Assembly (NCBI GenBank): GCA_965240325.2
Contig: OZ251224.1
Location: 2,418,001-2,482,000, forward strand
Source of the DNA: Rebecca billardiae RCC1528
Taxonomy: Eukaryota > Protista > Haptophyta
Length of the DNA stretch: 64,000 nucleotides
Direction: 5' to 3'
Within the stretch, counting starts at the first letter, position 1, and each line of letters opens with the position of its first letter. A program made the translations under genes and the position numbers. Under the pieces are notes generated by a model. The model was given only the letters and a program-made list of their open reading frames with translations. It did not search any database and was not told the origin of the DNA. This document shows positions 1 to 39,807 of this stretch, piece by piece.

Positions 1-3000
1 CGGGCGCGCAGCAGCCGAGCGGCGCGCGCGGCGCGCACGGGTCGGCTGGCGCGAGGCCGGCGGCGGCGTCGGCGGCATCGTCGAGCTCCCACAGCGTGTC
101 GGTCACGTGCGCGGCGCACGCCGCCACGCCCGCCGGCCCGACGCGCGCGCGCGGCGCGCGGCACTCCGCTCCCCACACCAGCTCCACAGCCACGCCGTGC
201 GCACTCGCCGCCCAGCCAATCAGGGCGCTGCCGTTGGCCGCGCCGCCGGCGTTGGCGGCGTCGGCGTCGCGCGGCGCAAAGACGACGGTGGCGAGGCGCA
301 CGAGCCGGCTGGGCGCGGCAGCGCCGCCGTCGGCGTCGTCCGCCAAGATCCCGTCTGCACCGCCGGCGATGATCAGCCGGCCCGGAAACGCATGGTCGGG
401 CGCGCAGAGCGCGTGCAGTGCGCGCGCGGCCGGCTCGCACGAGCGCACGCGCAGCACGTCGGCGCGGTAAGCAATTTCGAGTTGGTACAGCCGGAGCGGC
501 GAGGCGCCGACGTGCGCCCAGAAGCTGAGCTCGGCGGCCTCGCCGCCGTCGAGTAGCCGCACCGGCGGCACGCACGCGAGTGCGCCCTCGCCCTCCTCCT
601 CCGTGCCGAAGCCCACGCCGATGCGGCCGAGCGGCGGCGTCGCGACGACGGCAGCGAGCGTCGCGCGCGCGACGATGGCGGGCGCGCACGTGACGCGCGC
701 GCTCAGCTCGACGGCGGCGGCGTGCGTGTCGAGCAGCTCGACGGTGCCGTCGCCCGCGCTCACGTTCACCGCGCACGGCGCGGACGAGCCGTACGCGAAC
801 GCGCCCGCCAGCGCGCCGTGCGCCGTCGTCGAGACCACGGTCCCGTCGGCGAACGTGGCGGCCAGTTCAAGTCGACCGAGCGTGGCGCGCGGCGCGCCGC
901 ACAGCGCGGCCGGCGAGGCGCGCGCGCGCACCGAGGCGACGCCGAGCGGCGCGACCGCCGAAATCTCGACGTCGAGCTCGCCGAGCGCGCCGTACCACGC
1001 CACGCGCACGCGCGCGCTGCCCGGCGACACGCCGTCCACGACGAGCACGCTCACGCCGCCGCCGGACACACCGAGCGCGCGCGCGGCCGCGACCGCGGGC
1101 ACAGAGCTCATCGTGTCGAGCTCGGCGGCGGGGACGTCGACCCAGGGCGCGGCGGGGTGCGCGCGCGCGCGCACGCGCAGCACGGCGCGCTCGAACGGGC
1201 CGTCCGCGCACGCGAGCCTGCGCAGCACCAGCGTCTCTGCCGGCGTCGGCGACGCCTCATCCACGTCGGCCGCGGCCGCGACGGCGGCGTCGGCCGCGGC
1301 CGCGTCGGCGGCCGCGTCGTATGCCGGCAGAAGCGTCAGGGCGAGCTCGGGCACGGCGGGCGCGATGGGCAGCGTCGCGCGCGCGGAGCGGCCGCTTGGC
1401 GCGTGCGTGGCGACGAGGCTCACGTCGCCCCGCACCGCCGGGTCCGCGCACGCCGCGCCGGCCGCGCCGGACGCCGGCAGCTGCACGCGCGCCGCGGCAG
1501 AGTCGGGCGAGGCGGGCGAACCGTGATGCGCAGGCGGCGCTCGCGTGACGGGCGCGGCGAGTGCGGCGCAGCCGGCGTCAACGCCGTCGCCCTCGAGCGA
1601 GACGGTGACGCCCGCCGCGCTCGAGACGTCGACGACGCTGCCGTCCGCGTACACCAGCTCCACCGCCACCTCGACCGAGTCCGGGAGCCCGAGCGGCGGC
1701 GCCGCGGCCGGCTCGCTCCCGAATGCGAGCGCGGCCGCGCCGCGCAGACGCACCCGTAGCTCGGCCGGGGGCGCGCGCGGCGTGTCCACGCGGGCGAGGG
1801 CGAAGCCCTCCCACGCGGCGGCGGGCCCCGCGCCGCACGGGTCCCAGAGCACGCGCACGAGCTCGCCGCACGCCGGCTCCGCCGTGGACTCGTCCAGCAC
1901 CACGCCCGTGCCGTTGGCCACGACGCTGAGCCCCGCGTGCGCAGAATAGGTGCCGCCGAGCGCCGCGGCGGCGGCCGCGCCCGCGCGCGGCAGCTCGGCG
2001 ACGCTGCCGTCGTCGAAGGTGGCAAAGGCGATGATCGCCGCGGTATCGCCCTCGTGCGCCAGGGTCTGCGTCAGCCGGAGTGTACCGCTCGTGTTCGAGC
2101 CGCCGCCGGGCGCCGCCTCGCTCGCCCAGAGCGCTGCACTCACCGCGTAGCCTTCGACGGCCGTCACGGCGGCCATGCTGTCAGAGACTCGTACCCGAAC
2201 AGAAGCGTTCAGCGCAGCGGAGCCGCCGTTGAGCGGGCGTACGGTGGCGACGCCCGGCGAGACGCCGCGGAGCCAGCCGCTCGCCTCGACGACGACGACG
2301 CCCGCGTCGTCCGAGCCCAGCTCGAACGCGTCCGTCGCGTCGACGACGCCCCACGGCAGGTCGGCGCGCACGCGCACGCGCGCCGGCTGATACTGCTGCG
2401 CGCCGCCGCCCGCGGCGCACACGCGGCCGAGCGTGCCGTCGGCGTCGGAGAGCTCGAGGCGGACGGCGATGGGCACGGCAAGGGCGAAGGTGAGCTCAGT
2501 GCTCACCCGCCCGCCATCCGCGCTGAGCAGCACGCGCGCCACCGGCGCCGCCGCCGCCGCGTCGATCTCGTCGCCGAGCTCGAGATTGCAATCTGAGCCG
2601 ACGCGCACGGAGCGCGCGCTCACGCCGTCGGCCGCTACGCACGTCGCGTCGGCGGCGAGGGAGATGGGCTCATGCGGCGCGTCGCTCAGCGCGAGCGCAC
2701 GCGCGCGCAGTGACATTGCCGCGCGCTCGCCGAAGAGCGGTGCGCCATTCACGAGCGGGCGCGGCGCGGCCCAGCCGCACGCGCCGCCGTCGGCGGCGCT
2801 GGCGCCGGCGCCGGCACCGCTGCTGTCGGCCGCCGCCGCTGTGCTGTTGGCGTCGGCCAGAGGCAGCGGCAGCAGCGCCGCTAGCTGCGCGCGCGCGAGC
2901 TGCACGCCCGCCGCGCGGTCGTCCGCCCACGCGCCCGCGCTCTGCGCGTCCGCCACCGCGGCGCGCGGCGCGTCGCACTCGAGCGCCGCCGCGAGCGCGC

Positions 3001-6000
3001 TGAGCACTTGGCCGCACGAAGCGCCGAGCGCGTCGGCCGCCCAGCCGGCGGCCGCGTCCGGACTCGAGCGAAGCGTGACCTGTGCGAGGACAACCTCGCC
3101 CTCGTCGGCGGCCTCGGCTTCGTCGGCGAGCGCGAGGCTTGGCTCGGTCTGCGCCGCGACGCTCGCGAGCGCGAAGCTGCCGTTGCCCAGCGCGCGCACC
3201 GCGGGCGCGCGCAGCAGGCCCTCGCCCTCGCCCTCCGGCGGGCCTCCGACTCCGAGTAGCTCAAACGCCGCACCGACGAAGATGTGTGCGTGCCACGCGC
3301 CGACGCCGCTCGGCGCGCGCGCGGAGAGGCGTACGACGAAGGGCTCGGACACGCGCACGGGCGCGCGCGGCGCGCGCAGCAGCAGACGCACCCCGCCGCC
3401 CGACGCGCCCGCGTCCACGGCGGCGGGCACAGCCGGCGCGGCCGCGAGCAGCGCACGCGCCTCGGCCGCGGCGCCACTGCCCGCGCGCGCGCTCACGACC
3501 AGCTCGCGCGCGCTCTCGTTGCCGAACCAGCCGCGCGGCACGGTGGCCTCGCACTCGGCGAGGCCGGCGCACGCCCACTCCGCGTGCGCCGCGCACGCCA
3601 GCACGAGCGTCCCCTCCACTGCGCCGGCAGTGCCCGACGCAACCAGCGGCCGCGCCGTCACGTTGAGCGCCACACCGCCGCCGGCCTCGGCCGCCGACCA
3701 CGCCACCGGTTCGCCCGAGCGGTCTCGGAGCTGGAGCGCGAGGGAGAGCGTCGGGCGGTCGATGTGGAGGAGCGGCGTGCGCAGTGCGAGACCGAGCGTC
3801 GACACGTCCCGCCGCTCCGACGCCGCAGCCGCCGCAGCAGAGGTGGCAACCTCCGCCGCGCCCGCCACCGCAATCCCAACTCCGCCATTGCCGAGCGCGA
3901 ACAGCTCGCCGTGGCCGAGCGCGCCGTCGAGCGCGCGGCCGAGCGCCGCCGCGCCGCCGCGCAGCGCGTAGGTGCTCGGCACGCCGGCGTCGGAGAGCGC
4001 CAACCAGCCGCCGCGCTCGGCGCCGAGCGCGCTCTGCTGCGCGACGAGGGCGCGCGCCGCGCCCGCCGTGAGCAGCTCAGGCTGTGCGCACGCGAGCGGC
4101 GGCGGGCTTGGCGGCGCGGGCGGCGGGCTCGGCGGGCTCGGCGGCGGAGCGGACGGTGGCGGGCTCGACGGCGGCGGGCTCGGTGGCGGCGAGGGCGGCG
4201 GGCTCGGCGGTGGCGGGCTCGGCGGCGGGCTCGGCGGGCGCGCCGGCGGTGGGCTCGGCGGCGGGCTCGGCGGCGCACTCGGCGGCGGCGGGCTCGGCGG
4301 CGGGCTCGGCGGTGGCGCAAGCACCTGAATCAAGAGCCCGCTGAGCGCCTCGAAGAAGTCGCCGCCTGTGTCGGCATGTGGCGACACGGTCAGGCCCTTG
4401 AACGAGCGCAGCCCAACGTTGTCCGGGAAGCGGCCGAGCTCCTCGACGCGGTTGAGCCGCTCCACGCCCACCGCCAGCTGGATCGTGTCGCTCACGCGCG
4501 GCCAGCCGCCCGCGGGCGCCGCCACGCGCACCACAAACAGCCCGCCGCCCGCGTGCTCGGCGCGCGCCACCCAGTGGCCGACGGAGGACGCGCCGCCGGC
4601 CCACGTCTCGCCCATCTCGTACGGCGGCGAGCCGAGCTCGGCGTACCCCACGTCGAGCTCGAAGAGCACCACCGCCTCGGCGTCAAGCGTCGCGTCGTCC
4701 GACACGGGCACGCGGTTGTAGTAAGACTCGAGACGGGCCGAGAGCTCGAGCGCCGAGCTGCCGCCGAGCCCGAGCGTCGGCGGGCTCACGGACGCTTCGG
4801 AGAGGTAGTGCAGCCGGTTGAGCAGCGCATCGCCGAGGAACTGTCTGTTCGCCGCGTCGAGCGTCGCGGTCCACCAGTCCGCGCCCTCGGGCGTGCGCAG
4901 CGCCGGGTCCGTCTGCAACTGGTCCCACTCGCACACCGCCGAGCGGTCGACAAACCAGTCGGACGCCTGCGGATCGTTGGCATCGAGGAGCGTAAGGTAG
5001 ATCTGGAGGCGGGCGAAGACGACGAGGTCGCGCGCGGACGCGATGCCGTCACCGTCGAGGTCGCCGCGCACAAGCAGGTCGCAGCACTCGCCGGCCGCGC
5101 ACTCCTGCGCACGCCGGCCGCGCGCCGCCGCCGCCGTGCGCTCAGCCGCTGCGCCGCGCGCCGCGCGCCACGCCGGCCCGGCGACGGCGGCTCTCCTGCG
5201 CGCGCGCGGCCGGAGGCCAAGACGCTGCCGCAGCGAGCGCCGCCGCCGGCCGCCACCCACGACCGCGCACGTCTCGCCCGCGACGGCGGCGGTGGCCTGC
5301 ACCGACGCACCCGACGCTGTGAGCAGGTCGTCGATCGTCGCGCCGATCCTTGCCGCCGTCTCCGCGCCCACGCCGCCGTTCACCGTGAGCACCACCGTCA
5401 CGAGCGTGCCGCCAGCGAACGTAGACGTCAGGCTGGCTGCGATCACGTACACGCGGTCGGACTGGCCCTGGCAGTCGACACCCATCAGCGGCGAGACGCC
5501 GACGCACGTGTCGGCGCGGCGGTACGAGAGGACCGACGGGTCGAACTCGACGAACAGGCCGAACGCGCGCAGCGCCGAGCCGCCCGTGTTCACGCGCACC
5601 TCCACGTGCAGCTCGGCGCCCGCTGCGGCCGAGCCGGGGGTGAATGGCAGCGTGCCGGCGGCGTGTGCGCCCAGGTCGACGTCCAGGGCGGCGGGGTTGA
5701 GGTTGGTGCCGAGCAGCGCGGTGGCGCGCGGAGGCGCGGAGGCGGCACCGGCCTCGGGCACGCACGAGAGCGCCGCGCCCAGCTCGAAGCGCTCGCACGC
5801 GTTCTCGAGCACCGTGAGCGCGCCCGTGCCCGCGTCGACCGCCAGCGCGGCCGCGTCGGTCGAGTCGTAAGCCAGCATGCCTGCGAGCCAGCCGTCGGCC
5901 GCGGCGAAGGAGGCGACGTCCGGCAGCTGTGAGCCATCGGAGAGGGTGGCGGTGCCGAGCAGCCGACCCGAGGACGCGCCGCTCACGCCGCTCACCACGC

Positions 6001-9000
6001 CGCCCGGCGCCGTCGAGCCCAGGCTGAGCGACGACACCGTGATCTCCTCGTCGACCAATCGGATGGTGGCAGCCGCCTCCCACCCTGCCCACGCCGCGGT
6101 GGCGAGCACCGACTCGGCAGGCGCCCGGCCCTCGAAGACGCCCGCGTCCGAGCCGAGCGGCACGAGCGCGGACGTGCCCGGCGCGGACCAGCTCATCGCG
6201 CTCGCAGGCAGCAGCCCGGAGCGCCCGTCGCTCAGCTCGTACGCCGCGCGCGCGCGCAGCCGCTGCCAGGCGCCGCCGGCGCACGGGATGCGGCGCAGCT
6301 CGGCGGTGGGCGCGCACCCAACCGTGTCGAGCGCGCTTGATGGGTACGGCGCGCCAGCGCACACGCTGAGCGCGCGCAGCCGCACGATGGGCACGACCAG
6401 CGTCGCCGGCGCGAGGCCGAGCGCGGGCATGCCCACCGTCACGTTCAGCTCGGCGCACGGCGCGCCAGCGCGCACGCGCACGAGCCACGCCGAGGGCAAG
6501 CCGCTACCGCCGCCATCGTCACGCGAGAGCTCGGCGCACGCCGCGCTCGCGCCGCCGAGGGTGGCGTTGAGCCGCGCGTCGGCAGAGAGGTCGCGGGTCT
6601 CCTCCTCACCTGGCGCGTCCTCGCGCGCGAACGTCACGCGCGCGACCACCTCGAACTCTGTCGGCAGCGACACGGGCGACGCGGCGGCGGCATCGTCCGG
6701 AGGCGCGACGCCCGCCGCCGCGCCGCCGCTCGCGCCGAGCGCGAGATCAGTCGCAACGGGCAGGTCGAGCTTGATGAGCGCCTCGGCGGTGGCGAGCGGC
6801 GCGGCGCAGCCCGCGGGCGTCCACTCCGCGCGGACGAGCGGCGCGCACGCGCCGACCGCGCCCACCGCCACGGTGAGCGTCCATGCATCATCGCCCGCAA
6901 TCTCGAGATCGAGATCCGGCGTGAGCGCCGTGAGCGTGAGCTCGTACGCGGGCACGGCGATGGCGCGGCTCGCGTTCGCGGCGGCGCCGTCGTACTCAGC
7001 CCAGCCGAGCACGCGCGCGGTCTCGCCCTCGAAGCGCAGCGTCTGCTCCAGCGTCGCCACCGCGCGTATCTCCTCGTCCCCCGCGCTCGTCAGCGCCAGC
7101 GAGACGCCCGACACTGCGACGAGCGCGAGCGTCACAGGCGAGCTCGAGGCGCTCACCTGCACGGGCGCGGACGCGACGATGGCGGCGTCGGCGCCGTCGA
7201 GGTGGACGAGGGCGTCGCCGGGGGCGAGGCCGCGCACGTGCACGAAGCCGGCGCTCGTCGTCTCCACCGCCGCGACGGCGCCGTCGCTCACGCCCAGCAG
7301 CCCCGCCACGCGCCGCGTCACGTCGAGCTGGCTCGTCGTCGGCAGCCCGGCGCCGCCAAACCGCGCGAGCACGCGCGCGCGCGTGCGTTGGAAGTGCGCG
7401 GTGCACGAGGGTGCGGCCTCGAGCAGCGCGTCGTCGAGGTGCACCGCGGCGGACTGCACGGTCCACACCTGCAGCGGCACGACGGCCACCTCGCCGCCGT
7501 CCGCGTCGCGCGTCACGCGCACCTCGACGCGCGCGGCGCCGCTCCGCTGCGCCGCGCCCGCGCGAACGCTCGCGCACGAGTCGACGACGATGATGTCGGA
7601 CGCCGCCGCCGTGTTGGCGGGCGCGCAGGAGTAGCCGTTCGGTGAGAGCGAGGCGAGGCTCGTCGCCGCGCGCGCGCGCGCTGCGGTGAGCGCCAGCCCC
7701 GCGCTCGCCGCACTCTGCGCGCCGCTCAGCGCGCCGTCGTTCAAGAGCACAGCCGAGTTGGCGCTCGCAAAGACGCCGACAAGCGAATTGTCTTCGACCG
7801 TGAGTGAGGCCGTCGTCTGGTCCAGCGAGAAGTCGGCGCTGTCGGTGACGCTCATCGGCGCAGCGCTGAGGTACGCGAACGCGGGGAACGTGGTCATGCG
7901 CACCACCTCGCCGCTCAGCGCGCTCGCGTACATGCCCGCGCTCGCGCCCGCGCGCACGCGCAGCCGTAGCGTCAGCACGGGAAGCGCGTCAGACGTGACC
8001 TGGGCGGCGCGCACGCCCCCGGCCACGTCGCCGACACTCACGCGGACCCTCTCGGAGGACGACTCGAGCTCGTTGATGTCGGCGACGTACAGCCCGTCCA
8101 CCAGCACGTCCGAGTTCGTGTCGCCCGCTGCCAGCTCGAGCACCGTCGCGTCGAATGTCACGGTCACCTCCCACGCGCGCAGGGGCCTGCCGCCCGTGTG
8201 CGCAATGATGCTGACGGTGAACACGTCGCCGGCGAAGATGGGCGCGGAGGCGAAGGCGGCGCGCATGCCTGCCGCGCTCATCGCCGGCTCGTGCACCGGC
8301 GTGCGCGCCACGCCGAGCGCGCCGCCAAGCACCGTCGACGCCACCTCCTCCGAGTCGTATGCGACGCGCACGTCAGCGCTCGCGCTCCGCGCCGCTGCCG
8401 TCGAGAACCAGCCTGCCGGGAAGCTTCCGGAGCATTCGCCGATCCCCGTGGTGGCGCTCGGCGTGGCACACGAAAGCGCGCGCGTCGCGCTAGGCAGGTC
8501 GTCGCGCGAGAGCGTCACGCTCACGCGCAGCCCCGAGCGGAGCACCGCCGTCCGCCCTGCCGCGTCGCGCAGCTGGAAGGCCAGCCGGACGGCCGGACGA
8601 GTCGCGTAGCCAACCGTCGTGCGCACGAGCGCTCGGATCTCGGCCGCGCGCGCCTGCGGCGCGGTGCGCGAGCTGGACGAGAAGGTGATGGCAGCAAGCG
8701 ACGCGTCCACCGTGACGGTCAAGCCGGGCGCGAGTGTGAACAAGCCGCCGAATGCGCGCGACTGCTCTGCGCCGCCACTCCCGGCCTCGCTGCCGTCCAG
8801 TGCGAGCGCCCGCTCGGAGCTGAGCCGCGCGCGCGCGCCCGCAACTAGCTGAGTCGGGTCAAGGCAAAAGGCTGGTGGCGGCGGCGGCGGAGCCGAGGGC
8901 GGCGAGGGCGGCGGCGAGGGTGGCGGGGGCGGCGAGGGCGGGGGCGAGGGCGGTGGAGGAGGCGGCGAGGATGGCGGCGGCGGCGATGGTGGTGGCGACG

Positions 9001-10231
9001 GAGGTGGCGATGGCGGCGGCGCCGGCGGCGACACGGGCGGTGGCGAGGGTGGCGGCGAGGGCGGCTGGCTTGGCGGCGGCGAGGGCGGCGGGCTGGGCGG
9101 CGGGCTGGGCGGCGGGCTGGGCGGCGGGCTGGGCGGCGGGCTGGGCGGTGGGCTCGGCGGTGGGCTCGGCGGCGGGCTCGGCGGCGGGCTCGGCGGCGGC
9201 TGGTAGCACGACGCGATCGGCTCCGGGAACCTGTGCGTGCACGCGTCGCTGTCCTTGCCCGTGTCAACCGCCGTGCCCATTGAGAAGCCAGTGAGCGGCT
9301 GCGTTGCGTTCACTGTGCGCATGGTGTACACGTGCAGCTGCTCGTACACGAGCTCAAACGTGCCCGCCACGCGGAAGCCATCGCCCACGCCACCCCCATT
9401 CCGCAGCACGAGCTGCACCGCAAAGCTCGAGCCGCACCCCGACGTGGGATCGTCGCAGCAAGTGTCTGCCAGATCCTCTGAGAAAAGGCAGCGATGGTCA
9501 GCGACGCGGTCCCATACGAAGAGCGCGTGCCCCGCGTCCACGCGCGCGTGCACCTCGTTGTTAAAGTCGTGCAGCAACGGGATGAACTCCCAAAAGGCAT
9601 CGCCCACGAGCGCAAAGTGCCACATCGGCGCGATCAGCTTTCGCGTGCGGAATTCGTCCAGGTCTGGATATCGCGCGTGCAGCACTCTGGACGTGTCGGC
9701 GGAGTGGAGGAGCTGGACGAACCCCGCGGAGGAGACCTGGACGTGCGAGTAGTTGGCGCCACCGTACGGGAAGGGTGTCTCTAGCGCCACGATCGCCGAC
9801 GGCGCGCCCTCGTCGCCGCCGAGGTCCGACATGGTGATCGGGCTGAGGCCGGCATGTGCGCACGGGTCCCCACTCGTGCCGTCCGCGTCGAGCGAGAGGC
9901 CGCCGAAGCGGACGTCGCTGCACTCGGAGGGAGAGACGAGGTCGTACATGCACACGTCGTAGTCCTCCGTGCCGCGTGGTGTGAAGCGGCGCACGGTGCG
10001 CGTGAGGCCCGCATCCGCGGGGACGAGCCGCGACGACGCATCGGGCGGCGGCAGGCAGGACTCGCCCACCGGGCAGTACTCGTCGATGTCGGCGTAGGTG
10101 AGGCCCACGCACTCGCCGGGGTGCCCCGTTGACGCCACCTCGCGCGGGGCGCAGCACAGCGCGAGGAGCACCCCGGTGCCGATGATGTGTCGCATCTTTT
10201 CGGGGCGCGAGCGCGTTTGAAGTGCGTCCAT
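1..10231 (-). CDS. Giant secreted/surface protein (partial, >3,400 aa): signal peptide, NIDO-like domain, two Ser-Pro3 tracts, two TMEM132-like supermodules (cohesin-like plus Ig-like), dockerin-like motif
   Basis: Manual translation: ATG 10231 (second ATG 10195, MRHIIGTGVLLALCC). The same frame was checked at 8227, 5065 and 490, and the ORF track lists no stop-terminated ORF in this frame, so it appears open to the window edge. Motifs: LETPFPYGGANYSHVQVSSAGFV (NIDO-like); GDVFTVSIIAHTGGRPLRAWEVTVTFDATVLEL and GAELHVEVRVNTGGSALRAFGLFVEFDPSVLSY (cohesin-like); FQRTRARVLARFGG..LDVTRRV..VSDGAVAAV..VRGLAPG (TMEM132-type Ig); RGDLDGDGIASARDLVVFARL (dockerin-like). Confidence 0.88.
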   Translation of the reverse strand, partial: MDALQTRSRPEKMRHIIGTGVLLALCCAPREVASTGHPGECVGLTYADIDEYCPVGESCLPPPDASSRLVPADAGLTRTVRRFTPRGTEDYDVCMYDLVSPSECSDVRFGGLSLDADGTSGDPCAHAGLSPITMSDLGGDEGAPSAIVALETPFPYGGANYSHVQVSSAGFVQLLHSADTSRVLHARYPDLDEFRTRKLIAPMWHFALVGDAFWEFIPLLHDFNNEVHARVDAGHALFVWDRVADHRCLFSEDLADTCCDDPTSGCGSSFAVQLVLRNGGGVGDGFRVAGTFELVYEQLHVYTMRTVNATQPLTGFSMGTAVDTGKDSDACTHRFPEPIASCYQPPPSPPPSPPPSPPPSPPPSPPPSPPPSPPPSPPPSPPPSPPPSQPPSPPPSPPPVSPPAPPPSPPPSPPPSPPPPSSPPPPPPSPPPSPPPPPSPPPSPPSAPPPPPPAFCLDPTQLVAGARARLSSERALALDGSEAGSGGAEQSRAFGGLFTLAPGLTVTVDASLAAITFSSSSRTAPQARAAEIRALVRTTVGYATRPAVRLAFQLRDAAGRTAVLRSGLRVSVTLSRDDLPSATRALSCATPSATTGIGECSGSFPAGWFSTAAARSASADVRVAYDSEEVASTVLGGALGVARTPVHEPAMSAAGMRAAFASAPIFAGDVFTVSIIAHTGGRPLRAWEVTVTFDATVLELAAGDTNSDVLVDGLYVADINELESSSERVRVSVGDVAGGVRAAQVTSDALPVLTLRLRVRAGASAGMYASALSGEVVRMTTFPAFAYLSAAPMSVTDSADFSLDQTTASLTVEDNSLVGVFASANSAVLLNDGALSGAQSAASAGLALTAARARAATSLASLSPNGYSCAPANTAAASDIIVVDSCASVRAGAAQRSGAARVEVRVTRDADGGEVAVVPLQVWTVQSAAVHLDDALLEAAPSCTAHFQRTRARVLARFGGAGLPTTSQLDVTRRVAGLLGVSDGAVAAVETTSAGFVHVRGLAPGDALVHLDGADAAIVASAPVQVSASSSPVTLALVAVSGVSLALTSAGDEEIRAVATLEQTLRFEGETARVLGWAEYDGAAANASRAIAVPAYELTLTALTPDLDLEIAGDDAWTLTVAVGAVGACAPLVRAEWTPAGCAAPLATAEALIKLDLPVATDLALGASGGAAAGVAPPDDAAAASPVSLPTEFEVVARVTFAREDAPGEEETRDLSADARLNATLGGASAACAELSRDDGGGSGLPSAWLVRVRAGAPCAELNVTVGMPALGLAPATLVVPIVRLRALSVCAGAPYPSSALDTVGCAPTAELRRIPCAGGAWQRLRARAAYELSDGRSGLLPASAMSWSAPGTSALVPLGSDAGVFEGRAPAESVLATAAWAGWEAAATIRLVDEEITVSSLSLGSTAPGGVVSGVSGASSGRLLGTATLSDGSQLPDVASFAAADGWLAGMLAYDSTDAAALAVDAGTGALTVLENACERFELGAALSCVPEAGAASAPPRATALLGTNLNPAALDVDLGAHAAGTLPFTPGSAAAGAELHVEVRVNTGGSALRAFGLFVEFDPSVLSYRRADTCVGVSPLMGVDCQGQSDRVYVIAASLTSTFAGGTLVTVVLTVNGGVGAETAARIGATIDDLLTASGASVQATAAVAGETCAVVGGGRRRRSLRQRLGLRPRARRRAAVAGPAWRAARGAAAERTAAAARGRRAQECAAGECCDLLVRGDLDGDGIASARDLVVFARLQIYLTLLDANDPQASDWFVDRSAVCEWDQLQTDPALRTPEGADWWTATLDAANRQFLGDALLNRLHYLSEASVSPPTLGLGGSSALELSARLESYYNRVPVSDDATLDAEAVVLFELDVGYAELGSPPYEMGETWAGGASSVGHWVARAEHAGGGLFVVRVAAPAGGWPRVSDTIQLAVGVERLNRVEELGRFPDNVGLRSFKGLTVSPHADTGGDFFEALSGLLIQVLAPPPSPPPSPPPPSAPPSPPPSPPPARPPSPPPSPPPPSPPPSPPPSPPPSSPPPSAPPPSPPSPPPAPPSPPPLACAQPELLTAGAARALVAQQSALGAERGGWLALSDAGVPSTYALRGGAAALGRALDGALGHGELFALGNGGVGIAVAGAAEVATSAAAAAASERRDVSTLGLALRTPLLHIDRPTLSLALQLRDRSGEPVAWSAAEAGGGVALNVTARPLVASGTAGAVEGTLVLACAAHAEWACAGLAECEATVPRGWFGNESARELVVSARAGSGAAAEARALLAAAPAVPAAVDAGASGGGVRLLLRAPRAPVRVSEPFVVRLSARAPSGVGAWHAHIFVGAAFELLGVGGPPEGEGEGLLRAPAVRALGNGSFALASVAAQTEPSLALADEAEAADEGEVVLAQVTLRSSPDAAAGWAADALGASCGQVLSALAAALECDAPRAAVADAQSAGAWADDRAAGVQLARAQLAALLPLPLADANSTAAAADSSGAGAGASAADGGACGWAAPRPLVNGAPLFGERAAMSLRARALALSDAPHEPISLAADATCVAADGVSARSVRVGSDCNLELGDEIDAAAAAPVARVLLSADGGRVSTELTFALAVPIAVRLELSDADGTLGRVCAAGGGAQQYQPARVRVRADLPWGVVDATDAFELGSDDAGVVVVEASGWLRGVSPGVATVRPLNGGSAALNASVRVRVSDSMAAVTAVEGYAVSAALWASEAAPGGGSNTSGTLRLTQTLAHEGDTAAIIAFATFDDGSVAELPRAGAAAAAALGGTYSAHAGLSVVANGTGVVLDESTAEPACGELVRVLWDPCGAGPAAAWEGFALARVDTPRAPPAELRVRLRGAAALAFGSEPAAAPPLGLPDSVEVAVELVYADGSVVDVSSAAGVTVSLEGDGVDAGCAALAAPVTRAPPAHHGSPASPDSAAARVQLPASGAAGAACADPAVRGDVSLVATHAPSGRSARATLPIAPAVPELALTLLPAYDAAADAAAADAAVAAAADVDEASPTPAETLVLRRLACADGPFERAVLRVRARAHPAAPWVDVPAAELDTMSSVPAVAAARALGVSGGGVSVLVVDGVSPGSARVRVAWYGALGELDVEISAVAPLGVASVRARASPAALCGAPRATLGRLELAATFADGTVVSTTAHGALAGAFAYGSSAPCAVNVSAGDGTVELLDTHAAAVELSARVTCAPAIVARATLAAVVATPPLGRIGVGFGTEEEGEGALACVPPVRLLDGGEAAELSFWAHVGASPLRLYQLEIAYRADVLRVRSCEPAARALHALCAPDHAFPGRLIIAGGADGILADDADGGAAAPSRLVRLATVVFAPRDADAANAGGAANGSALIGWAASAHGVAVELVWGAECRAPRARVGPAGVAACAAHVTDTLWELDDAADAAAGLAPADPCAPRAPLGCCAP
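4098..4318 (-). repeat. Coding Ser-Pro3 (extensin-like) tract 2
   Basis: Tandem ggcggcgggctc units encoding SPPP. Confidence 0.9.
8870..9203 (-). repeat. Coding Ser-Pro3 (extensin-like) tract 1
   Basis: Tandem 12-bp units ggcggcgggct[cg] encoding SPPP in the giant ORF frame. Confidence 0.9.
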
Positions 10232-10745
10232 GGAGTTCGGCGGAGCAAGAGGAATATCGATCGACGTATCCTTCTCAGCAGTAACAGCCACATCCTCCGG
10301 TTCTCACCGTTCTCAGCAATAATTATTAATTCATGTACCAACCGAAAGGAACATTTTTCGGCTATTTGGCCTGATTTGACCGGTGCGAATCTGACCAATG
10401 AAAGGACGGCATCAACCCCTGAAAGAACGACCTCGTACCCTTGATGTGAGTAATTGTATCTTGATGAGAATTAGTAGTATCAAATGAGCGATGGTCCACG
10501 GCTCAGCGCGCCGGATCCTGTATTCAACATCCTTCAATCAACTCCTTCGGCTCATCAGGCAACTCAACTCATACTGTACCACTCTTTGAAATGCGCTCAT
10601 CATGTCACTTCTGGAGTCTTCAGCCAAGGGCGGTGCGCAGCGGCGAAGTCTCCTAGGCCGCCTCCCTGTCCTCCTGCGGCCGCGGCACCGGCCGCGGACA
10701 CGGCGCGCGTGGTTGGGCGCCTGCTAGACTCGACAGCACGTAGTA

Positions 10746-33707: not shown

Positions 33708-36700
33708 TCACTGCGCCGCCGCCGCCGCCGCCGCCGCCGCGGGGAAGGCGGCGAGCAGGCAGGCGATGCGGCAGTCAGCGCGGTGCGCGTCGCGCTCGCC
33801 GCCGCACGCAAAGCACGCGCCCGCCGCCGCCGCCGAGCCGTCGAGCGCGCGCAGCGCGTCGTAGGCTGACGCGGCCCACTGCGCCATGGAGGACGGCGCG
33901 TGGCCCGGCGCCGCCGCGAGCGGCCGCGCCGCGGGCTTCGCCGGCATCGGCATCGGCGGCACGGCGTGCGACGCGCTCGCGGGCGGCGCGGCCGGCGGCG
34001 GCGGCGCGGCCGGCGGCGGCGAAGCCCAGCCGGGCGGCGGCGGCGGCGCGTGCTGCTGCGCGGCAGCGCGGTGCGCGCCAGACGGCCTGGGACACCAGCC
34101 CGCGTGCAGGCTCGCGAGCAGCTCGCGGTGGTGCGCGACGCCGAACGCGGCGCCGAGCGCGGACGTGCGCCGCGCGCCGGGCGCCGCGCGCGCCGTCCCC
34201 TCCAGCCGCGCCCACGGCGCAGAGTCGGCGTCGAGCGCGGCGCGCAGCGCGGCGCGCGCCGCGCCGAACGCTTGCAGCACCGCGCTCACCTTGTAGCATA
34301 CGCGCGCGGCGTTGGCGTTGACGGAGCCCGCGCGTAGCTGCGGCGGGTTGAGCACCACCATCGGGTCGTGCTCGCACCCGGCGCACGAGTCCGCGAGCGC
34401 CTCGCGCCGCGGCCACTCGACCGCGCCAGTGGCCGGCTCGACGCGCGGCGGCGCCGAGAGACACACGACGTGCGCACTCGGCTCGAGCGCGCAGATTGCG
34501 TCGAGCGCGAGGAGCAGCAGCTCGGCCAGTCCGGGCGTGGGCGGCGGCAGTCCGGCGGGCGTTGGTGTGTGCGCGGCGTGCGCGCCGCCGCCCTGACCGC
34601 CAGCCCCTGGCGCGGCGCCGGCGGCTGGCGGAAGGCCGCCGGCGCCGCCGTCGGCGCGCGCTCCCTCCGCGCCGCCAGGCACGCGCGCGGCGGCGGCGGC
34701 GGCGGCGCCGCCGCCGCCGAGCGCGACGCCGCGCGCGACTCCGCGCAGCACGGTGGCGAGCAGCAGCGTGAGCGCGTGCGAGGAGAGCCCGCCGTCCGGC
34801 GCGCCGAGCAGCGCGCGGCACGCCAGCAGCTGCTTCGCGACGAGCGTGAGCGCGCGCAGCGGCGGCAGCTCCGACTGCAGAGCCAGGGCCACGCGCGTCG
34901 CCGCGGCGCCGCGGTGCGCGCAGCCGTGCGCGAACGAGACGTCAGCGGCCAGTGGGACGGAGGACGGCGGCTGGCGGGGCTGCGCGGCGGCGGCGGCGGC
35001 GGAGGCGTGCGCGCCCAGGCCCCCGAGCGGCGCCGCGTCCGCCTCCGCGCGCGCCTCGAGCTTGAGCAGCGGCACGGGCGAGCGCTCCACGGGCACGCAC
35101 ACACTCACCCACGGGGCAGCCGCGAGCGCGCGCGCGAGCTCGGCGACACACATGGCGGGAGGCGGCAGCGCGGAGCCGCGCAGCTCGAGCGCGATGTCCA
35201 CGTCGGACTGCGGCAGCGCGAGGCCCGAGGCGACCGAGCCGAAGACGAAGACGGACACGCGCCCGCCCGGCCACGAGCGCTCCGCCGCCGCGGCGACGCG
35301 GTCCACAATGGCCGCCTGCCACGCGTGCCGGCGCGCGCAAAGCACACTCAGCTCCGTGGCAAAGTCTGAAACGTCGGCGGAGAGCGCGTGAAGGGCGGGG
35401 CGGGCGGCGTGCGGCGGGATGGCGGGCGAGGGCGAGGGCGGGCGGAACGGCGGCGGCGAGGGCGCGGCGGGCGGGCGCGAGGGCGTCGGCGGCGTCGGCG
35501 GCGCCGCCGCCGCGGCGGGCGCCGTCGCGCGCAGCGGCTCAGCCGGCTCGGGCGGCGGCGGCGGCGGACGCGACGGCGCGGGCTCGGCGGCAGGAGTGGA
35601 AGCCGCGCGCTGCCGCCGCAGCGCGAGCGGCGGCGAGGCGGCGTCGGCAGCCGCGGGCGGCTCGGCTGAGCGCGCGCCCTCCGCGCCCGCCGCCACGCTC
35701 GGCGGCGCGGCCGCGGCGGCCGCGGCCTCGGCCGGCGGCGGCTCGGCGCCGTCGGCGGCTGGCGCCGCCGCCGCCGCCGCTCGGTTGCGCCGCGCCGCGC
35801 GCCGCGCGCCGCGCGCCGCGCGCCGCCGGCTTGGCGCTGCCGGCGGCGGCGGCGCCGGTGCCGCCACCGCCGCCGCCGCCGCCGCCACGGGCGCCGGCGC
35901 CTCGGTCGCGTCCGCGCCCAGCCACTCGAGCGTCGCCGAGGCGAGCAGCTGCGAGCAGCCGTCAAGCACCGCGGCCCAAAGCGCTTGCCGGCCGAGCGCC
36001 GCGCCGCCCGCGCCGCCGCCCTCAGGCGCGTCTGAAGCGCCGCCGCGCCGCGCGCCGCGCCGCGCGCCCTCCGCCTGCAGCTGCGCCCACGGCACCAGGG
36101 GCCCGGCCTCCAGCAGCGCATCGACGCGGGGCCCAGCCTCCAGCAGCGCGTCGGCGCGCAGGGCCGCGCAGCCCTCCGCCTGCGCCTTCGCCTGCAGCTG
36201 CGCCCACGGCACCGGCGGGAGCCCTGATGCCTCAAGCAATGCGTCTGCGCGCAGCGGCGCGCAGCCTTCCGCCAGCGACGAGGGCGGAGCGGGCGGCGGG
36301 CGCGGCGGCGGCGCGGCGGCGGCGCGCCGGGCGAGCGCGCCGGCGCGCGGCCGCGCGTTCCGCGCCCGCGCGCCGCGCCGCGCGCCCGCCGCCTCGCCCG
36401 CCGCCTCGCCCGCCGCCGGCGCCGCCGCCGCGCCGCCGACGCCGCCGAGCGCACGCGCCGCGCGGCTCACCAGCCAGTCTCGCTCGGCGGCGCCGAGGTC
36501 GCTCCACGCGCGGAGGACGCGGACGACGGGCTCGGCGCCGGGTGGCGCGACGGGCGTCGCGCGCGCGCCGAGCCACGCCGCGTGCGCGCCGTGCAGCCGC
36601 GACGCGAGCGCGCGGCCGAGCAGCGCGCCTGGGGTGACGACGGCGGCGCGCGGCGGCGGCGCGCGCCCGGCAGCCGCGCGCTTGCGCAGCGCGTGCGGCG

Positions 36701-37409
36701 CGCCGGCGCCGGTGGCGCGGACGGGCATCTCGACGAGCACGCCGCCGACGATCGCACGTCGCACCGCGCACTCGAGCGAGTCCACGTCGGCCGCGAACTC
36801 GCGCGAGACGGCGACGACGACGGGCGCGGCGGCCGCGGCCGCGGCCGCGCCGCCGCCGCTCGGCGGCGCGGCCGCGCCGCCGCCGCCGCCGCCGCGCACG
36901 ACGCGCGTGCAGTGGACGAGCGCGGCGCTCGACGCGTGGTCGAGCCATGTGGGCAGCGGCGCAAGCGCGAGCGCGCTCGCCGCGCCGAGCGCCACCCACT
37001 CGCAGCACGTGCGCGGCGCGGCCGGCGCGGCCGGAGGCGCCGCCATCGCGCCCACATCCGCGCCTGTATGTGAGTAGAGGACGAGGAAGCCGGGCGCGTC
37101 GGAGGCCGCGGCGATGGCCGCGGCGACGGCGGGCTCGAGCCCCAGCGCGAGCACCGCCGCGCGCTCGTCCGCGCGCAGCCCGCGCACCCAGTCCCACGCC
37201 GCGTCCCACCAGCTCTCTGAGAGCGAGTCCCAGCGCGCTGCAGCCGCGGCGGACGCGCGGTCCTCGTCGTCGGCGGCGGCGGTGGCGGGGTCGGTGTCGG
37301 AGGCGGGGGCATCGTCGGCCGACGACGGGTGGCCCGTCCAGTACGCCTCGTTCCCCAAGCACGCCGAGAGCAGCGCCGGGAGCACCTCGGCGTCCGCCTG
37401 CCGCGGCAT
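33708..37409 (-). CDS. TRF4/PAPD5-like non-canonical poly(A) polymerase / terminal nucleotidyltransferase
   Basis: VFGSVASGLALPQSDVDI (Pol-beta GS..DxD), VPLLKL, ADVSF and LRALTLVAKQLL..GGLSSHALTLL. First ATG at 37409. Confidence 0.88.
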   Translation of the reverse strand: MPRQADAEVLPALLSACLGNEAYWTGHPSSADDAPASDTDPATAAADDEDRASAAAAARWDSLSESWWDAAWDWVRGLRADERAAVLALGLEPAVAAAIAAASDAPGFLVLYSHTGADVGAMAAPPAAPAAPRTCCEWVALGAASALALAPLPTWLDHASSAALVHCTRVVRGGGGGGAAAPPSGGGAAAAAAAAPVVVAVSREFAADVDSLECAVRRAIVGGVLVEMPVRATGAGAPHALRKRAAAGRAPPPRAAVVTPGALLGRALASRLHGAHAAWLGARATPVAPPGAEPVVRVLRAWSDLGAAERDWLVSRAARALGGVGGAAAAPAAGEAAGEAAGARRGARARNARPRAGALARRAAAAPPPRPPPAPPSSLAEGCAPLRADALLEASGLPPVPWAQLQAKAQAEGCAALRADALLEAGPRVDALLEAGPLVPWAQLQAEGARRGARRGGASDAPEGGGAGGAALGRQALWAAVLDGCSQLLASATLEWLGADATEAPAPVAAAAAAVAAPAPPPPAAPSRRRAARGARRAARRNRAAAAAAPAADGAEPPPAEAAAAAAAPPSVAAGAEGARSAEPPAAADAASPPLALRRQRAASTPAAEPAPSRPPPPPPEPAEPLRATAPAAAAAPPTPPTPSRPPAAPSPPPFRPPSPSPAIPPHAARPALHALSADVSDFATELSVLCARRHAWQAAIVDRVAAAAERSWPGGRVSVFVFGSVASGLALPQSDVDIALELRGSALPPPAMCVAELARALAAAPWVSVCVPVERSPVPLLKLEARAEADAAPLGGLGAHASAAAAAAQPRQPPSSVPLAADVSFAHGCAHRGAAATRVALALQSELPPLRALTLVAKQLLACRALLGAPDGGLSSHALTLLLATVLRGVARGVALGGGGAAAAAAARVPGGAEGARADGGAGGLPPAAGAAPGAGGQGGGAHAAHTPTPAGLPPPTPGLAELLLLALDAICALEPSAHVVCLSAPPRVEPATGAVEWPRREALADSCAGCEHDPMVVLNPPQLRAGSVNANAARVCYKVSAVLQAFGAARAALRAALDADSAPWARLEGTARAAPGARRTSALGAAFGVAHHRELLASLHAGWCPRPSGAHRAAAQQHAPPPPPGWASPPPAAPPPPAAPPASASHAVPPMPMPAKPAARPLAAAPGHAPSSMAQWAASAYDALRALDGSAAAAGACFACGGERDAHRADCRIACLLAAFPAAAAAAAAAQ

Positions 37410-39802: not shown

Positions 39803-39807
39803 GTGCC

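What the first reader, a model, noticed from the sequence alone, without database searches (positions are those of the whole stretch)
1..10231. Giant eukaryotic cohesin-dockerin/TMEM132-like scaffold protein missed by the ORF track
Seen: an apparently uninterrupted frame of more than 3,400 codons with two supermodules, each starting with a Ser-Pro3 rod, and four cohesin-like starts (about 8230, 5620, 3350, 550) flanking Ig-like repeats, plus an N-terminal NIDO-like domain. Known: cohesin-dockerin pairs assemble bacterial cellulosomes, and animal TMEM132 has cohesin plus Ig domains. Inference: a self-assembling extracellular coat, scale or adhesion scaffold.
Basis: partly seen in the sequence, partly recalled or inferred. 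Interest (0 to 1): 0.72.

Follow-up and report, generated by a model that had tools for sequence, protein, structure and literature searches.

The report
Giant algal cohesin-dockerin surface protein
One uninterrupted 20-kb gene of a very GC-rich, probably haptophyte, alga encodes a 6,668-residue membrane-anchored surface protein; it has two cassettes that each join an animal-TMEM132-like adhesion core to two cohesins and a calcium-loop dockerin, so an orphan human adhesion fold sits in the same chain as its possible binding partner.

Summary
The minus-strand frame is open from window 10303 to the window edge and for 9.8 kb beyond it. It holds 6,668 codons from the first ATG (10231), with no internal stop where about 71 are expected.

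Coding-type GC3 bias holds along its whole length. A full-length paralogue (77% identity, all indels in frame, dN/dS 0.14-0.63) supports a real gene. No RNA evidence could be obtained.

The first half best matches vertebrate TMEM132 ectodomains. A family dockerin profile hits solved cellulosomal dockerins (E 3e-4). Cassette 2 was identified from family profiles, not modelled. The NIDO-like head is only a weak lead.

Past the window lie the second dockerin, a third proline rod, a transmembrane helix and a 2,900-residue multi-pass C-terminal half with no known domain.

The roughly 1,500-residue cassette recurs at least 25 times in this genome, in stop-free frames of up to 23,065 codons. It also occurs in Prymnesium, Diacronema, Pavlovales and the green alga Cymbomonas. 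Earlier follow-ups in this scan reached the same reading at paralogous loci. Self-assembly through cohesin-dockerin binding remains an inference.

The parts
10130..10231 (-). Start codon (ATG at 10229-10231) and signal-peptide-like N-terminus (aa 1-34; basic stretch, hydrophobic core IIGTGVLLALCCA, then PREVAS).
   Evidence: Read from the translation. The hydrophobic core and cleavage-type motif are conserved in the C24 paralogue. No signal-peptide predictor was available.
9197..10126 (-). Cys-rich N-terminal head domain (aa 36-345), possibly NIDO-like.
   Evidence: Only two paralogues in the genome (C24 82%, C8 47%). Conserved motifs are PFPYGG.NYSHVQVSSSGFVQLL and LIAPMWHFALVG. Pfam, PDB and word searches are blank. 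NIDO clusters make up 13 of 30 language-model neighbours at 0.91. dN/dS against C24 is 0.28.
8870..9196 (-). Rod 1: (Ser-Pro3)n and related Pro-rich spacer, aa 346-454.
   Evidence: Read from the translation. dN/dS 0.14 against the paralogue.
8300..8656 (-). Supermodule 1, pre-cohesin Ig-like beta-sandwich (aa 526-644). It sits where the TMEM132 second Ig domain / conserved region sits.
   Evidence: Model A residues 72-190 have pLDDT around 90. Filamin-type Ig matches at Z 9.0-9.3, rmsd 2.4-2.6. A TMEM132A N-terminal fragment aligns over model residues 24-465.
7787..8278 (-). Supermodule 1, cohesin 1 (aa 652-815), carrying the family motif AHTGG.
   Evidence: For model A residues 198-361 the top 14 VIA matches are all cohesins: Z 10.9-12.5; rmsd 2.6-3.5 over 126-146 residues for 13 single-module matches, plus one two-module match (2w1n, rmsd 8.4 over 213). 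Pfam Cohesin is sub-threshold in this protein (14 bits). It hits 7 of 17 family members at E<=0.01.
6752..7783 (-). Supermodule 1, three TMEM132-type Ig domains (4th, 5th, 6th), aa 817-1160.
   Evidence: Colinear Pfam hits to Ig_TMEM132_4th, 5th and 6th (E 0.009, 3e-5, 0.09; all below the cut-off). 12 of 17 family members hit the 4th domain, best E 4e-14. Shape search: TMEM132C TM 0.53 over 478 residues, TMEM132D 331 residues at rmsd 3.4.
5699..6751 (-). Supermodule 1, three further Big_2-like Ig domains (aa 1161-1511).
   Evidence: Model B residues 6-362. LigA matches at Z 11.8 (model 132-362) and FdeC at Z 8.8 (model 6-362). The A2 profile hits LigB/LigA Big_2 domains at E 0.005-0.03. Pfam Big_2 hits 1 of 17 members.
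5252..5692 (-). Supermodule 1, cohesin 2 (aa 1514-1660), carrying the family motif VRVNTGG.
   Evidence: For model B residues 365-511 the top 13 VIA matches are all cohesins: Z 12.3-13.9, rmsd 2.3-3.0 over 123-142 residues. Pfam Cohesin scores 19.7 bits, E 1e-3, below the 24.1 cut-off.
5087..5251 (-). Arg-rich linker between cohesin 2 and the dockerin (aa 1661-1715). It has GGGRRRRSL at its start and RGRRAQEC just before the dockerin cysteines.
   Evidence: pLDDT below 50 for model B residues 516-563. 75 of 91 distinct family dockerins have a dibasic site within 45 residues upstream, and 21 of 91 have RRxL within 30. Cleavage is an inference.
4796..5086 (-). Supermodule 1, dockerin 1 (aa 1716-1812). 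The first calcium loop, GDLDGDGIASARD, is canonical. The second loop is degenerate and carries an insertion.
   Evidence: Family alignment: G-D-x-x-G-D-(6 residues)-D and two cysteines are invariant in 15 of 15 sequences. The dockerin-only family profile hits 23 PDB sequences, nearly all dockerins, best E 2.8e-4 across both loops. Helices at model B residues 584-654.
4337..4795 (-). Supermodule 1, post-dockerin beta-sandwich domain (aa 1813-1965). Fold not identified.
   Evidence: Beta strands at model B residues 659-776, pLDDT 60-83. Conserved across the family, e.g. G.W, GGWP, ET.DALG, FPF.GSS. The cohesin filled the fold-search list, so this domain was not tested alone.
4097..4318 (-). Rod 2: Ser-Pro3-type spacer, aa 1972-2045.
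   Evidence: Read from the translation.
2795..3814 (-). Supermodule 2, pre-cohesin Ig-like domain (3422-3814) and cohesin 1' (2795-3403; aa 2140-2479). Strongly diverged.
   Evidence: A family profile built without the giant's own rows hits aa 2115-2432 (22.5 bits, i-E 2e-9, profile positions 50-336). Boundaries were transferred through the supermodule alignment. Not modelled.
638..2791 (-). Supermodule 2, six Ig-like domains: TMEM132-type x3 (1772-2791) and Big_2-like x3 (638-1771); aa 2481-3198.
   Evidence: Family profile hits aa 2467-2820 (76.3 bits, i-E 1e-25) and aa 2825-3668 (62.8 bits, i-E 1e-21), colinear with the profile. Boundaries.
92..628 (-). Supermodule 2, cohesin 2' (aa 3202-3380).
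   Evidence: Lies inside the 62.8-bit colinear A2 profile hit. The cohesin-1 profile also cross-hits aa 3231-3269. Boundaries. Not modelled.
1..91 (-). Short non-basic linker with the Cys pair (14-91) and the first codons of dockerin 2 (1-13). The dockerin (aa 3407-3477) continues beyond the window to about -199.
   Evidence: Pfam Dockerin_1 E 0.027 over 53 of 57 profile positions, below the cut-off. Both calcium loops are canonical: GDSDGDCVFSAYD and LDATRDGSVTLTD.

Best explanation
This is a real, probably single-exon gene (G000:C5:2408225-2428231, minus strand) for a 6,668-residue cell-surface giant of a very GC-rich alga of haptophyte type.

Shown:
- Layout of the outer part: a signal-peptide-like start, a Cys-rich head, then three Ser-Pro3 rods that space two supermodules of about 1,520 residues each.
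- Each supermodule reads Ig, cohesin, three TMEM132-type Ig domains, three Big_2-type Ig domains, a second cohesin, a linker, a calcium-loop dockerin and a beta-sandwich. Its first half has the same domains in the same order as the animal TMEM132 ectodomain, with a similar overall shape.
- Layout of the rest: a transmembrane helix after the third rod, then 2,900 residues with at least five more hydrophobic helices and an Ala/Glu-rich repeat tail.

Inferred:
- The 3,700-residue N-terminal part projects from the cell on stiff, probably glycosylated, polyproline rods.
- Its cohesins and dockerins bind each other in a calcium-dependent way, either within one cassette as a clasp or between molecules and paralogues.
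- The many giant family members would thereby link into an adhesive or protective surface layer, while the multi-pass C-terminal half anchors the protein in the membrane.
- The Arg-rich linker in front of the supermodule 1 dockerin may be cut by a secretory-pathway protease. The pieces would then be held together only by the cohesin-dockerin contact.
For: Gene reality:
- 0 stops in 6,668 codons against about 71 expected.
- GC3 0.89 > GC1 0.76 > GC2 0.60, kept in every 100-codon block outside the rods.
- A full-length paralogue on C24 (6,831 aa, 77% identity) has 30 indels of 6 or more residues, all in frame, and dN/dS 0.14-0.63 in every region except the 39-codon transmembrane segment.

Domains:
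- Models have pLDDT 82 and 74.
- Both supermodule 1 cohesins give solved cohesins as top hits, Z 10.9-13.9.
- The shape search places the first half next to a haptophyte PF16070 cluster and vertebrate TMEM132C/D/A.
- Pfam hits to Cohesin, TMEM132 4th, 5th and 6th are colinear. Relatives pass the Pfam cut-offs.
- The dockerin profile hits solved dockerins at E 2.8e-4, and the first calcium loop is invariant.

The cassette as a unit:
- It aligns end to end in at least 19 own-genome copies.
- It is conserved with its dockerin in Prymnesium parvum, Pavlovales sp. CCMP2436, Diacronema lutheri and Cymbomonas tetramitiformis.

Topology: the strongly hydrophobic 19-residue windows all lie after aa 3768.
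Against: - No transcript or protein evidence.
- One family member (C8) has a canonical intron, so introns do occur in the family.
- In this protein itself every Pfam hit is below the curated cut-off.
- The supermodule 1 dockerin has a degenerate second calcium loop, and supermodule 2 lacks the basic linker.
- Each cassette has two cohesins but one dockerin. Vertebrate TMEM132 has the cohesin without any dockerin (PMC6030884), so the cohesin fold need not bind a dockerin.
- No interface could be examined, because model coordinates and PAE were not available.
- The C-terminal 2,900 residues match nothing.
Confidence: 0.6

Rival explanations
1. Same gene and architecture, but the cohesin and dockerin modules do not bind each other. 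The cohesin folds would act as rigid spacers or bind other ligands, as in TMEM132. The dockerin would be a calcium-stabilised structural or carbohydrate/protein-binding module. The protein would then be a mechanical tether, adhesin or receptor linking the outside to its large membrane-embedded and cytoplasmic half, not a self-assembling scaffold.
For: Vertebrate TMEM132 keeps the cohesin with no detectable dockerin (PMC6030884). Each cassette has a 2:1 cohesin:dockerin ratio, and the supermodule 1 dockerin has a degenerate second loop. The large polytopic C-terminal half looks more like a receptor or anchor than a scaffold subunit.
Against: Cohesin 2 and the dockerin are kept adjacent, in this order, in 75 of the 151 best relatives, which include haptophytes and a green alga. 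The first calcium loop is invariant. Such conserved linkage of a known binding pair is most simply explained by binding.
Confidence: 0.27
2. The 20-kb frame is not one protein. The ectodomain part (to about aa 3,800) and the C-terminal polytopic part would be separate products, through an unseen intron, an internal promoter, a polyadenylation site or proteolysis, that happen to stay in one open frame.
For: The C-terminal half has no relatives outside the C24 paralogue and a higher dS (0.47-0.64 against 0.14-0.35). Introns exist in the family. No RNA data were obtained.
Against: No stop separates the parts in either paralogue, despite 23% divergence and many indels. The coding GC3 pattern is continuous. 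Only one weak in-frame donor/acceptor pair is found in 20 kb. The Diacronema relative also continues through a transmembrane helix into a long tail in one gene model.
Confidence: 0.1
3. Artefact: a long open frame produced by extreme GC content, a pseudogene, or an assembly error.
For: In this genome antisense frames can stay open for 900-2,400 codons, so long open frames alone are weak evidence.
Against: 0 stops against a minimum of 51 in shuffles. Confident folded models. Profile hits of hundreds of bits to relatives in four named species. dN/dS below 1.
Confidence: 0.03

Closest known systems
Animal TMEM132 family (TMEM132A-E; Sanchez-Pulido and Ponting 2018, PMC6030884)
   Same: Same order of ectodomain modules: Ig/conserved region, cohesin-like domain, three tandem BIG-type Ig domains. 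Shape match to TMEM132C at TM 0.53 over 478 residues, and to TMEM132D over 331 residues at rmsd 3.4. Pfam TMEM132 4th, 5th and 6th domains hit in order. A membrane anchor follows the ectodomain.
   Different: About six times longer. The core is duplicated and extended by three more Ig domains, a second cohesin, a dockerin and a beta-sandwich. It is mounted on Ser-Pro3 rods. No TMEM132_C domain was found, and a 2,900-residue multi-pass half replaces the short tail. It occurs in haptophytes and a green alga, whereas the paper placed the origin of the architecture in early holozoans.
Bacterial cellulosomal scaffoldins and non-cellulosomal cohesin-dockerin proteins (e.g. C. thermocellum CipA/OlpA, A. 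cellulolyticus ScaB, C. perfringens GH84C/GH33)
   Same: Cohesin fold (Z 11-14; top hits 2w1n, 5nrk, 3ul4, 6kgc, 4uyp, 2vo8). A dockerin with duplicated EF-hand-like loops. Cohesins and a dockerin in one polypeptide, as in scaffoldins.
   Different: Eukaryotic, with no enzyme cargo or carbohydrate-binding module detected. The dockerin carries two invariant cysteines. The cohesin and dockerin are direct neighbours behind a basic linker. The context is Ig strings and proline rods. Binding has not been shown.
Choanoflagellate and sponge coherins, lefftyrins and hedglings (cited in PMC6030884)
   Same: Protist or early-animal surface giants that contain the TMEM132-type five-domain block, including a cohesin.
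   Different: Those are cadherin-repeat proteins. No cadherin domain was detected here, and the paper reports no dockerin for them. I did not compare sequences directly.
Hydroxyproline-rich glycoproteins and extensins of plants and green algae (Ser-Pro3-5 rods)
   Same: Long Ser-Pro3 repeat blocks that separate globular domains.
   Different: Prolyl hydroxylation and arabinosylation are untested in this organism. The globular domains are unrelated to those of known HRGPs. This comparison rests on general knowledge, not on a test here.

Membership tests
Cohesin (Pfam PF00963) | Nine-stranded beta-sandwich cohesin fold | tested here: met
   aa 652-815 and aa 1514-1660. The top 14 and top 13 structural matches respectively are solved cohesins, Z 10.9-13.9, covering almost the whole target. 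Single-module matches have rmsd 2.3-3.5; one two-module match (2w1n) has rmsd 8.4 over 213 residues. The supermodule 2 cohesins were not modelled.
Cohesin (Pfam PF00963) | Sequence score at or above the Pfam gathering cut-off (24.1 bits) | tested here: not met
   19.7 and 14 bits in this protein. The Diacronema homologue, aligned at 32% identity, scores 30.7 bits. 7 of 17 first-half and 3 of 17 second-half family members hit at E<=0.01.
Cohesin (Pfam PF00963) | Binds a dockerin | not testable with these tools
   Needs binding assays or a complex model with an interface confidence measure.
Dockerin type I (Pfam PF00404) | Two EF-hand-like calcium loops (D-x-[DNS]-x-D-G-x(5,6)-D), each followed by a helix | tested here: met
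   Supermodule 2 dockerin: both loops are canonical. Supermodule 1 dockerin: the first loop is canonical and the second is degenerate. G-D-x-x-G-D-(6 residues)-D is invariant in 15 of 15 family sequences. Helices are predicted after the loops.
Dockerin type I (Pfam PF00404) | Significant sequence similarity to known dockerins | tested here: met
   The family dockerin profile hits 23 PDB sequences, nearly all cellulosomal dockerins, best E 2.8e-4, 4.3e-4 and 4.4e-4 over both loops. As a single sequence, Pfam gives only 15.1 bits against a 22.9 cut-off.
TMEM132 family | Ectodomain block of conserved region/Ig, cohesin and three BIG-type Ig domains, in that order | tested here: met
   Colinear Pfam hits, shape matches to TMEM132A/C/D spanning model residues 10-705, and the cohesin fold.
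TMEM132 family | Pfam Ig_TMEM132_4th/5th/6th at or above the gathering cut-offs | tested here: not met
   This protein scores 16.4, 24.5 and 13.1 bits against cut-offs of 27, 28 and 27.8. Relatives pass for the 4th domain: Diacronema 33.4 bits, best family E 4e-14.
TMEM132 family | Single-pass protein with the TMEM132 C-terminal domain (PF15706) and a short cytoplasmic tail | tested here: not met
   No Pfam hit after aa 3,650. At least six hydrophobic helices and 2,900 residues follow. So it shares the ectodomain core but is not a TMEM132 orthologue.
NIDO domain (Pfam PF06119) | Sequence match to the NIDO profile | tested here: not met
   No hit at E<=10 for the head domain or its two paralogues. 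The only support is a language-model neighbourhood lead.
Hydroxyproline-rich glycoprotein / extensin-like rods | Ser-Pro3-5 repeat blocks | tested here: met
   aa 346-454, 1972-2045 and ~3646-3745.
Hydroxyproline-rich glycoprotein / extensin-like rods | Prolyl hydroxylation and O-glycosylation | not testable with these tools
   Needs biochemistry. A sub-threshold HPAT-like hit lies 27 kb away in the window, which is only a hint.

The most novel reading that the evidence does not exclude
The roughly 1,500-residue cassette is an ancient eukaryotic self-locking unit. The dockerin would bind a cohesin of the TMEM132-type block in a calcium-dependent way, and after a cut at the basic linker the giant proteins would be held together, or polymerised into a cell-surface lattice, by these clips alone. 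That would name the missing partner class for the orphan cohesin of human TMEM132 proteins. It would also move the origin of the TMEM132 ectodomain from early holozoans to before the split of haptophytes, green algae and animals, or else to an ancient gene transfer.
Probability: 0.25. Interest if true: 0.8.

Novelty: new variant of a known kind. Interest (0 to 1): 0.62.

Why it matters
[quoted passage not shown] Their cohesin-like domain has no known partner, because no dockerin is detectable in vertebrates (PMC6030884).

Here the same ectodomain block sits in one chain with a second cohesin and a genuine calcium-loop dockerin. That linkage is conserved in haptophytes and a green alga. This gives a directly testable candidate for what a TMEM132-type cohesin binds. 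It also questions the proposed holozoan origin of the architecture.

The family is also a striking case of protein gigantism. This genome holds stop-free frames of up to 23,065 codons built from the cassette. Public data hold 1,586 representative clusters, none of which is described in the literature I could search.

For algal biology, it is a candidate main component of the poorly understood pavlovophyte cell covering.

Tried and rejected
- **Self-BLAST.** BLAST of the protein against itself found only one weak internal repeat. The two supermodules are too diverged (25%) for pairwise search, so family profiles were needed.
- **Foldseek on whole models.** Searching the two multi-domain models against PDB gave only generic strings of Ig domains: NUP210, S-layer proteins, complement C3. 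The VIA-align and atlas searches were the informative ones.
- **Word-index protein searches.** Searches with the cohesin-plus-Ig core alignment and with the head-domain alignment found nothing. This is probably because Ala-rich words swamp the candidate list, since the exhaustive search then found 1,586 clusters.
- **Head domain.** Pfam and PDB sequence searches were blank.
- **C-terminal half.** Pfam, the protein atlas and the own-genome search gave nothing beyond the C24 paralogue. One own-genome search failed technically.
- **Hidden in-frame introns.** A scan found one unconvincing candidate.
- **Peer et al. 2009** (non-cellulosomal cohesins and dockerins) is not held in the library.
- **GC-bias artefact** was considered and rejected.
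- **Allelic haplotig.** I considered whether the C24 copy is an allele and rejected it, because dS is 0.14-0.64.
Full report
**Observation**

The window is extremely GC-rich at its left end (73-80% over 1-10,000). The ORF listing shows nothing large there because it omits ORFs that run off the source. A six-frame scan finds one minus-strand stretch, 10303..2, of 3,434 codons without a stop. The next longest open stretch in that region is 890 codons.

The window is G000:C5:2418001-2482000. I fetched the 20 kb before it. The same frame stays open for another 9.8 kb and ends at a TGA at window -9775..-9773. From the first ATG (10231) the frame has 6,668 codons (20,007 nt).

The frame has no internal stop. 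Base composition predicts about 92 stops. Shuffles that keep the composition of each codon position give 71 on average and never fewer than 51. The other five frames carry 28-121 stops. GC3 (0.89) exceeds GC1 (0.76) and GC2 (0.60) in essentially every 100-codon block outside the proline rods.

**Is it a gene?**

No RNA evidence could be obtained. 

Indirect evidence is strong:
- A second full-length copy lies on contig C24 (6,831 aa). It is 77% identical in protein and differs by 30 indels of at least 6 residues, all of them in frame.
- dN/dS between the copies is 0.28 for the head, 0.14-0.20 for the rods, 0.35-0.44 for the supermodules and 0.47-0.63 for the C-terminal half.
- dS of 0.14-0.64 means these are paralogues, not alleles.
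- Single-exon genes are common in the related Diacronema lutheri, at 45% of genes, in a genome of 73% GC (PMC8379373).
- Introns do occur in the family. The C8 copy has a 186-nt GTGAGC...TTTCAG intron with an in-frame stop inside cohesin 1.
- A scan of this gene for in-frame donor/acceptor pairs gave one unconvincing candidate.

**Anatomy**

Residue numbers count from the ATG:
- aa 1-34: a basic stretch plus hydrophobic start that looks like a signal peptide.
- aa 36-345: a Cys-rich head.
- aa 346-454: a Ser-Pro3 rod.
- aa 455-1985: supermodule 1.
- aa 1972-2045: rod 2.
- aa 2046-3600: supermodule 2.
- A polybasic run, RRRRRRSRR.
- aa ~3646-3745: rod 3.
- aa 3768-3786: a transmembrane helix.
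- 2,900 further residues, with strongly hydrophobic helices at 4440, 4902, 4928, 5770 and 5807, ending in an Ala/Glu-rich tail with a 240-nt repeat.

The window ends inside the dockerin of supermodule 2.

**Domain identities**

Pfam on the protein gives only sub-threshold hits, but they are colinear: Cohesin, then TMEM132 4th, 5th and 6th Ig domains, then a second Cohesin, and Dockerin_1 in supermodule 2.

A word-index search found a 4,660-residue Diacronema lutheri protein. It is 32% identical over 94% of aa 640-1660, with E 3e-104. It passes the Pfam cut-offs for Ig_TMEM132_4th and Cohesin.

The own genome holds at least 25 copies of the region at 32-38% identity. Nineteen of these that I fetched align end to end with supermodule 1 over about 1,520 residues and form about a dozen distinct lineages. 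Across 17 aligned members, 12 hit Ig_TMEM132_4th (best E 4e-14), 7 and 3 hit Cohesin in the two halves, 2 hit Dockerin_1 and 1 hits Big_2.

With these alignments AlphaFold2 gave confident models of supermodule 1 in two halves: pLDDT 82 with pTM 0.71, and pLDDT 74. Foldseek on the whole models returned only generic Ig strings. VIA-align against 48,161 representative chains was clear:
- Model A residues 198-361 (aa 652-815) and model B residues 365-511 (aa 1514-1660) have solved cohesins as their top 14 and top 13 matches. These are Z 10.9-13.9, with rmsd 2.3-3.5 over nearly the whole target for single-module matches.
- The domain before cohesin 1 is a filamin-type Ig (Z about 9).
- The three domains before cohesin 2 resemble LigA Big_2 pairs (Z 11.8).

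A shape search of model A against the ESM Atlas put it closest to a haptophyte cluster carrying PF16070. Next came vertebrate TMEM132C (TM 0.53, 478 residues aligned across model residues 10-705), TMEM132D (331 residues at rmsd 3.4) and a TMEM132A N-terminal fragment. The first half of the supermodule therefore shares the multi-domain arrangement of the TMEM132 ectodomain as well as its individual folds.

**The dockerin**

The family consensus is V-x-G-D-V-[SDN]-G-D-C-x-F-T-S-[FY]-D-V ... C ... L-D-P-T-L-D-G-x-V-x-x-x-D-x-x-Y-L-L. This is two EF-hand-like loops, each followed by a helix, plus two invariant cysteines.

A profile of this segment alone hits 23 PDB sequences, nearly all cellulosomal dockerins. 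The best hits are at E 2.8e-4 to 4.4e-4 and span both loops.

In this protein the supermodule 2 dockerin has both loops intact. The supermodule 1 dockerin keeps the first loop, but its second is degenerate and interrupted.

**Supermodule 2 and the linker**

Supermodule 2 is only about 25% identical to any other copy. Even so, profiles built without this protein's own rows hit it colinearly at 22.5, 76.3 and 62.8 bits. Transferring boundaries through the alignment puts the four cohesin N-terminal edges at window 8278, 5692, 3403 and 628.

The linker between cohesin 2 and the dockerin is disordered in the model and Arg-rich. Among 91 distinct family dockerins, 75 have a dibasic site within 45 residues upstream and 21 have RRxL within 30. 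In this protein supermodule 1 has RGRR four residues before the dockerin cysteines. Supermodule 2 has no basic linker. Cleavage is therefore a hypothesis, and not a uniform feature.

**The head and the C-terminal half**

The head has only two paralogues, on C24 and C8. It has no Pfam, PDB or word-search match. A language-model neighbourhood search put NIDO clusters among 13 of its 30 nearest, at score 0.91 with 164 shared features, which is below the tool's comfort level. Its conserved motifs resemble NIDO as I recall that domain. I treat NIDO-like as a lead only.

The C-terminal half matches nothing but the C24 paralogue.

**Distribution**

An exhaustive HMMER search with the first-half profile found 1,586 representative clusters at E<=1e-3, of which 419 are at E<=1e-30. 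These include proteins of up to about 8,000 residues with several cassettes.

Named members come from Prymnesium parvum, Pavlovales sp. CCMP2436, Diacronema lutheri and the green alga Cymbomonas tetramitiformis. UniRef auto-names some of them "TMEM132 fourth domain-containing protein". For example, Prymnesium has three tandem cassettes with a 1,385-residue period.

Full-text searches found no paper that mentions cohesin and dockerin together with haptophytes, and none of the top-ranked papers on these algae mentions TMEM132. The TMEM132 paper places the origin of the architecture in early holozoans and notes that vertebrates lack dockerins.

Other follow-ups in this scan described the same cassette at paralogous loci of this genome. 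One of these is a 20.5-kb two-cassette gene that is very likely the C24 paralogue. My results agree with theirs and were obtained independently on this locus.

**Mechanism**

Shown: the gene-like properties, the domain folds and their order, the predicted membrane anchor, and the conservation of the cassette.

Inferred:
- surface exposure of the N-terminal 3,700 residues on stiff proline rods;
- calcium-dependent cohesin-dockerin binding, within one molecule or between molecules;
- possible proteolytic processing at the basic linker;
- a role in an adhesive or protective surface layer.

The main rival is that the modules are structural and do not pair. That rival fits TMEM132, which has no dockerin, and fits the degenerate loop in supermodule 1.

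**Verdict**

This is a real and remarkable gene. It is a new architectural variant that combines two known kinds, the TMEM132 ectodomain and the cohesin-dockerin pair. It belongs to a large, unstudied protist family.

Noticed in passing
G000:C30 (~98-207 kb), C1 (~4.24 Mb and ~4.92 Mb), C17 (~394-433 kb), C21 (~47 kb): The same cassette sits in stop-free frames of 23,065, 20,497, 14,225, 20,156 and 14,857 codons. C17 shows at least 9 tandem cassettes with a period of about 4.55 kb. If these are translated as single products they are among the largest proteins known.
   Followed up: partly
G000:C24:~899,900-920,400 (loci L035, L036, L012): Full-length paralogue of this gene (6,831 aa, 77% identity). 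dS is uneven: 0.14 in supermodule 2 but 0.47-0.64 in the C-terminal half. This suggests gene conversion between the two copies in the ectodomain region.
   Followed up: partly
L013 (G000:C8:539467-548505), inside cohesin 1 of that copy: A canonical 186-nt intron (GTGAGC...TTTCAG) with an in-frame stop. Removing it restores the family motif AHTGGAFLFTWILEL. So introns exist in this family and are recognisable.
   Followed up: yes
window 1-10231 and L016 (G000:C17:427326-436175): Frames antisense to these genes stay open for 950-2,474 codons because of the extreme GC3 bias. ORF length alone is a poor gene signal in this genome.
   Followed up: partly
window 37700-41161 (-): A 1,154-codon open frame with a ShK domain (E 8e-7) and a sub-threshold match to the hydroxyproline O-arabinosyltransferase family (HPAT, E 0.0075, 16 bits against a 23.9 cut-off). 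An HPAT-like enzyme 27 kb from a Ser-Pro3 rod gene would fit rod glycosylation, but the hit is weak.
   Followed up: no
window 33711-37529 (-): A 1,273-codon open frame in an 81-83% GC block, with a poly(A) polymerase-like nucleotidyltransferase palm domain (MTPAP-like_central E 4e-8, NTP_transf_2 E 1e-6).
   Followed up: no
L004:724-1377 (window -9276..-8623), C-terminal tail of the gene: A 240-nt tandem repeat, 2.7 copies at 93% identity, encodes an Ala/Glu-rich, probably coiled-coil, tail (unit ELERARDGAASEASE...).
   Followed up: partly
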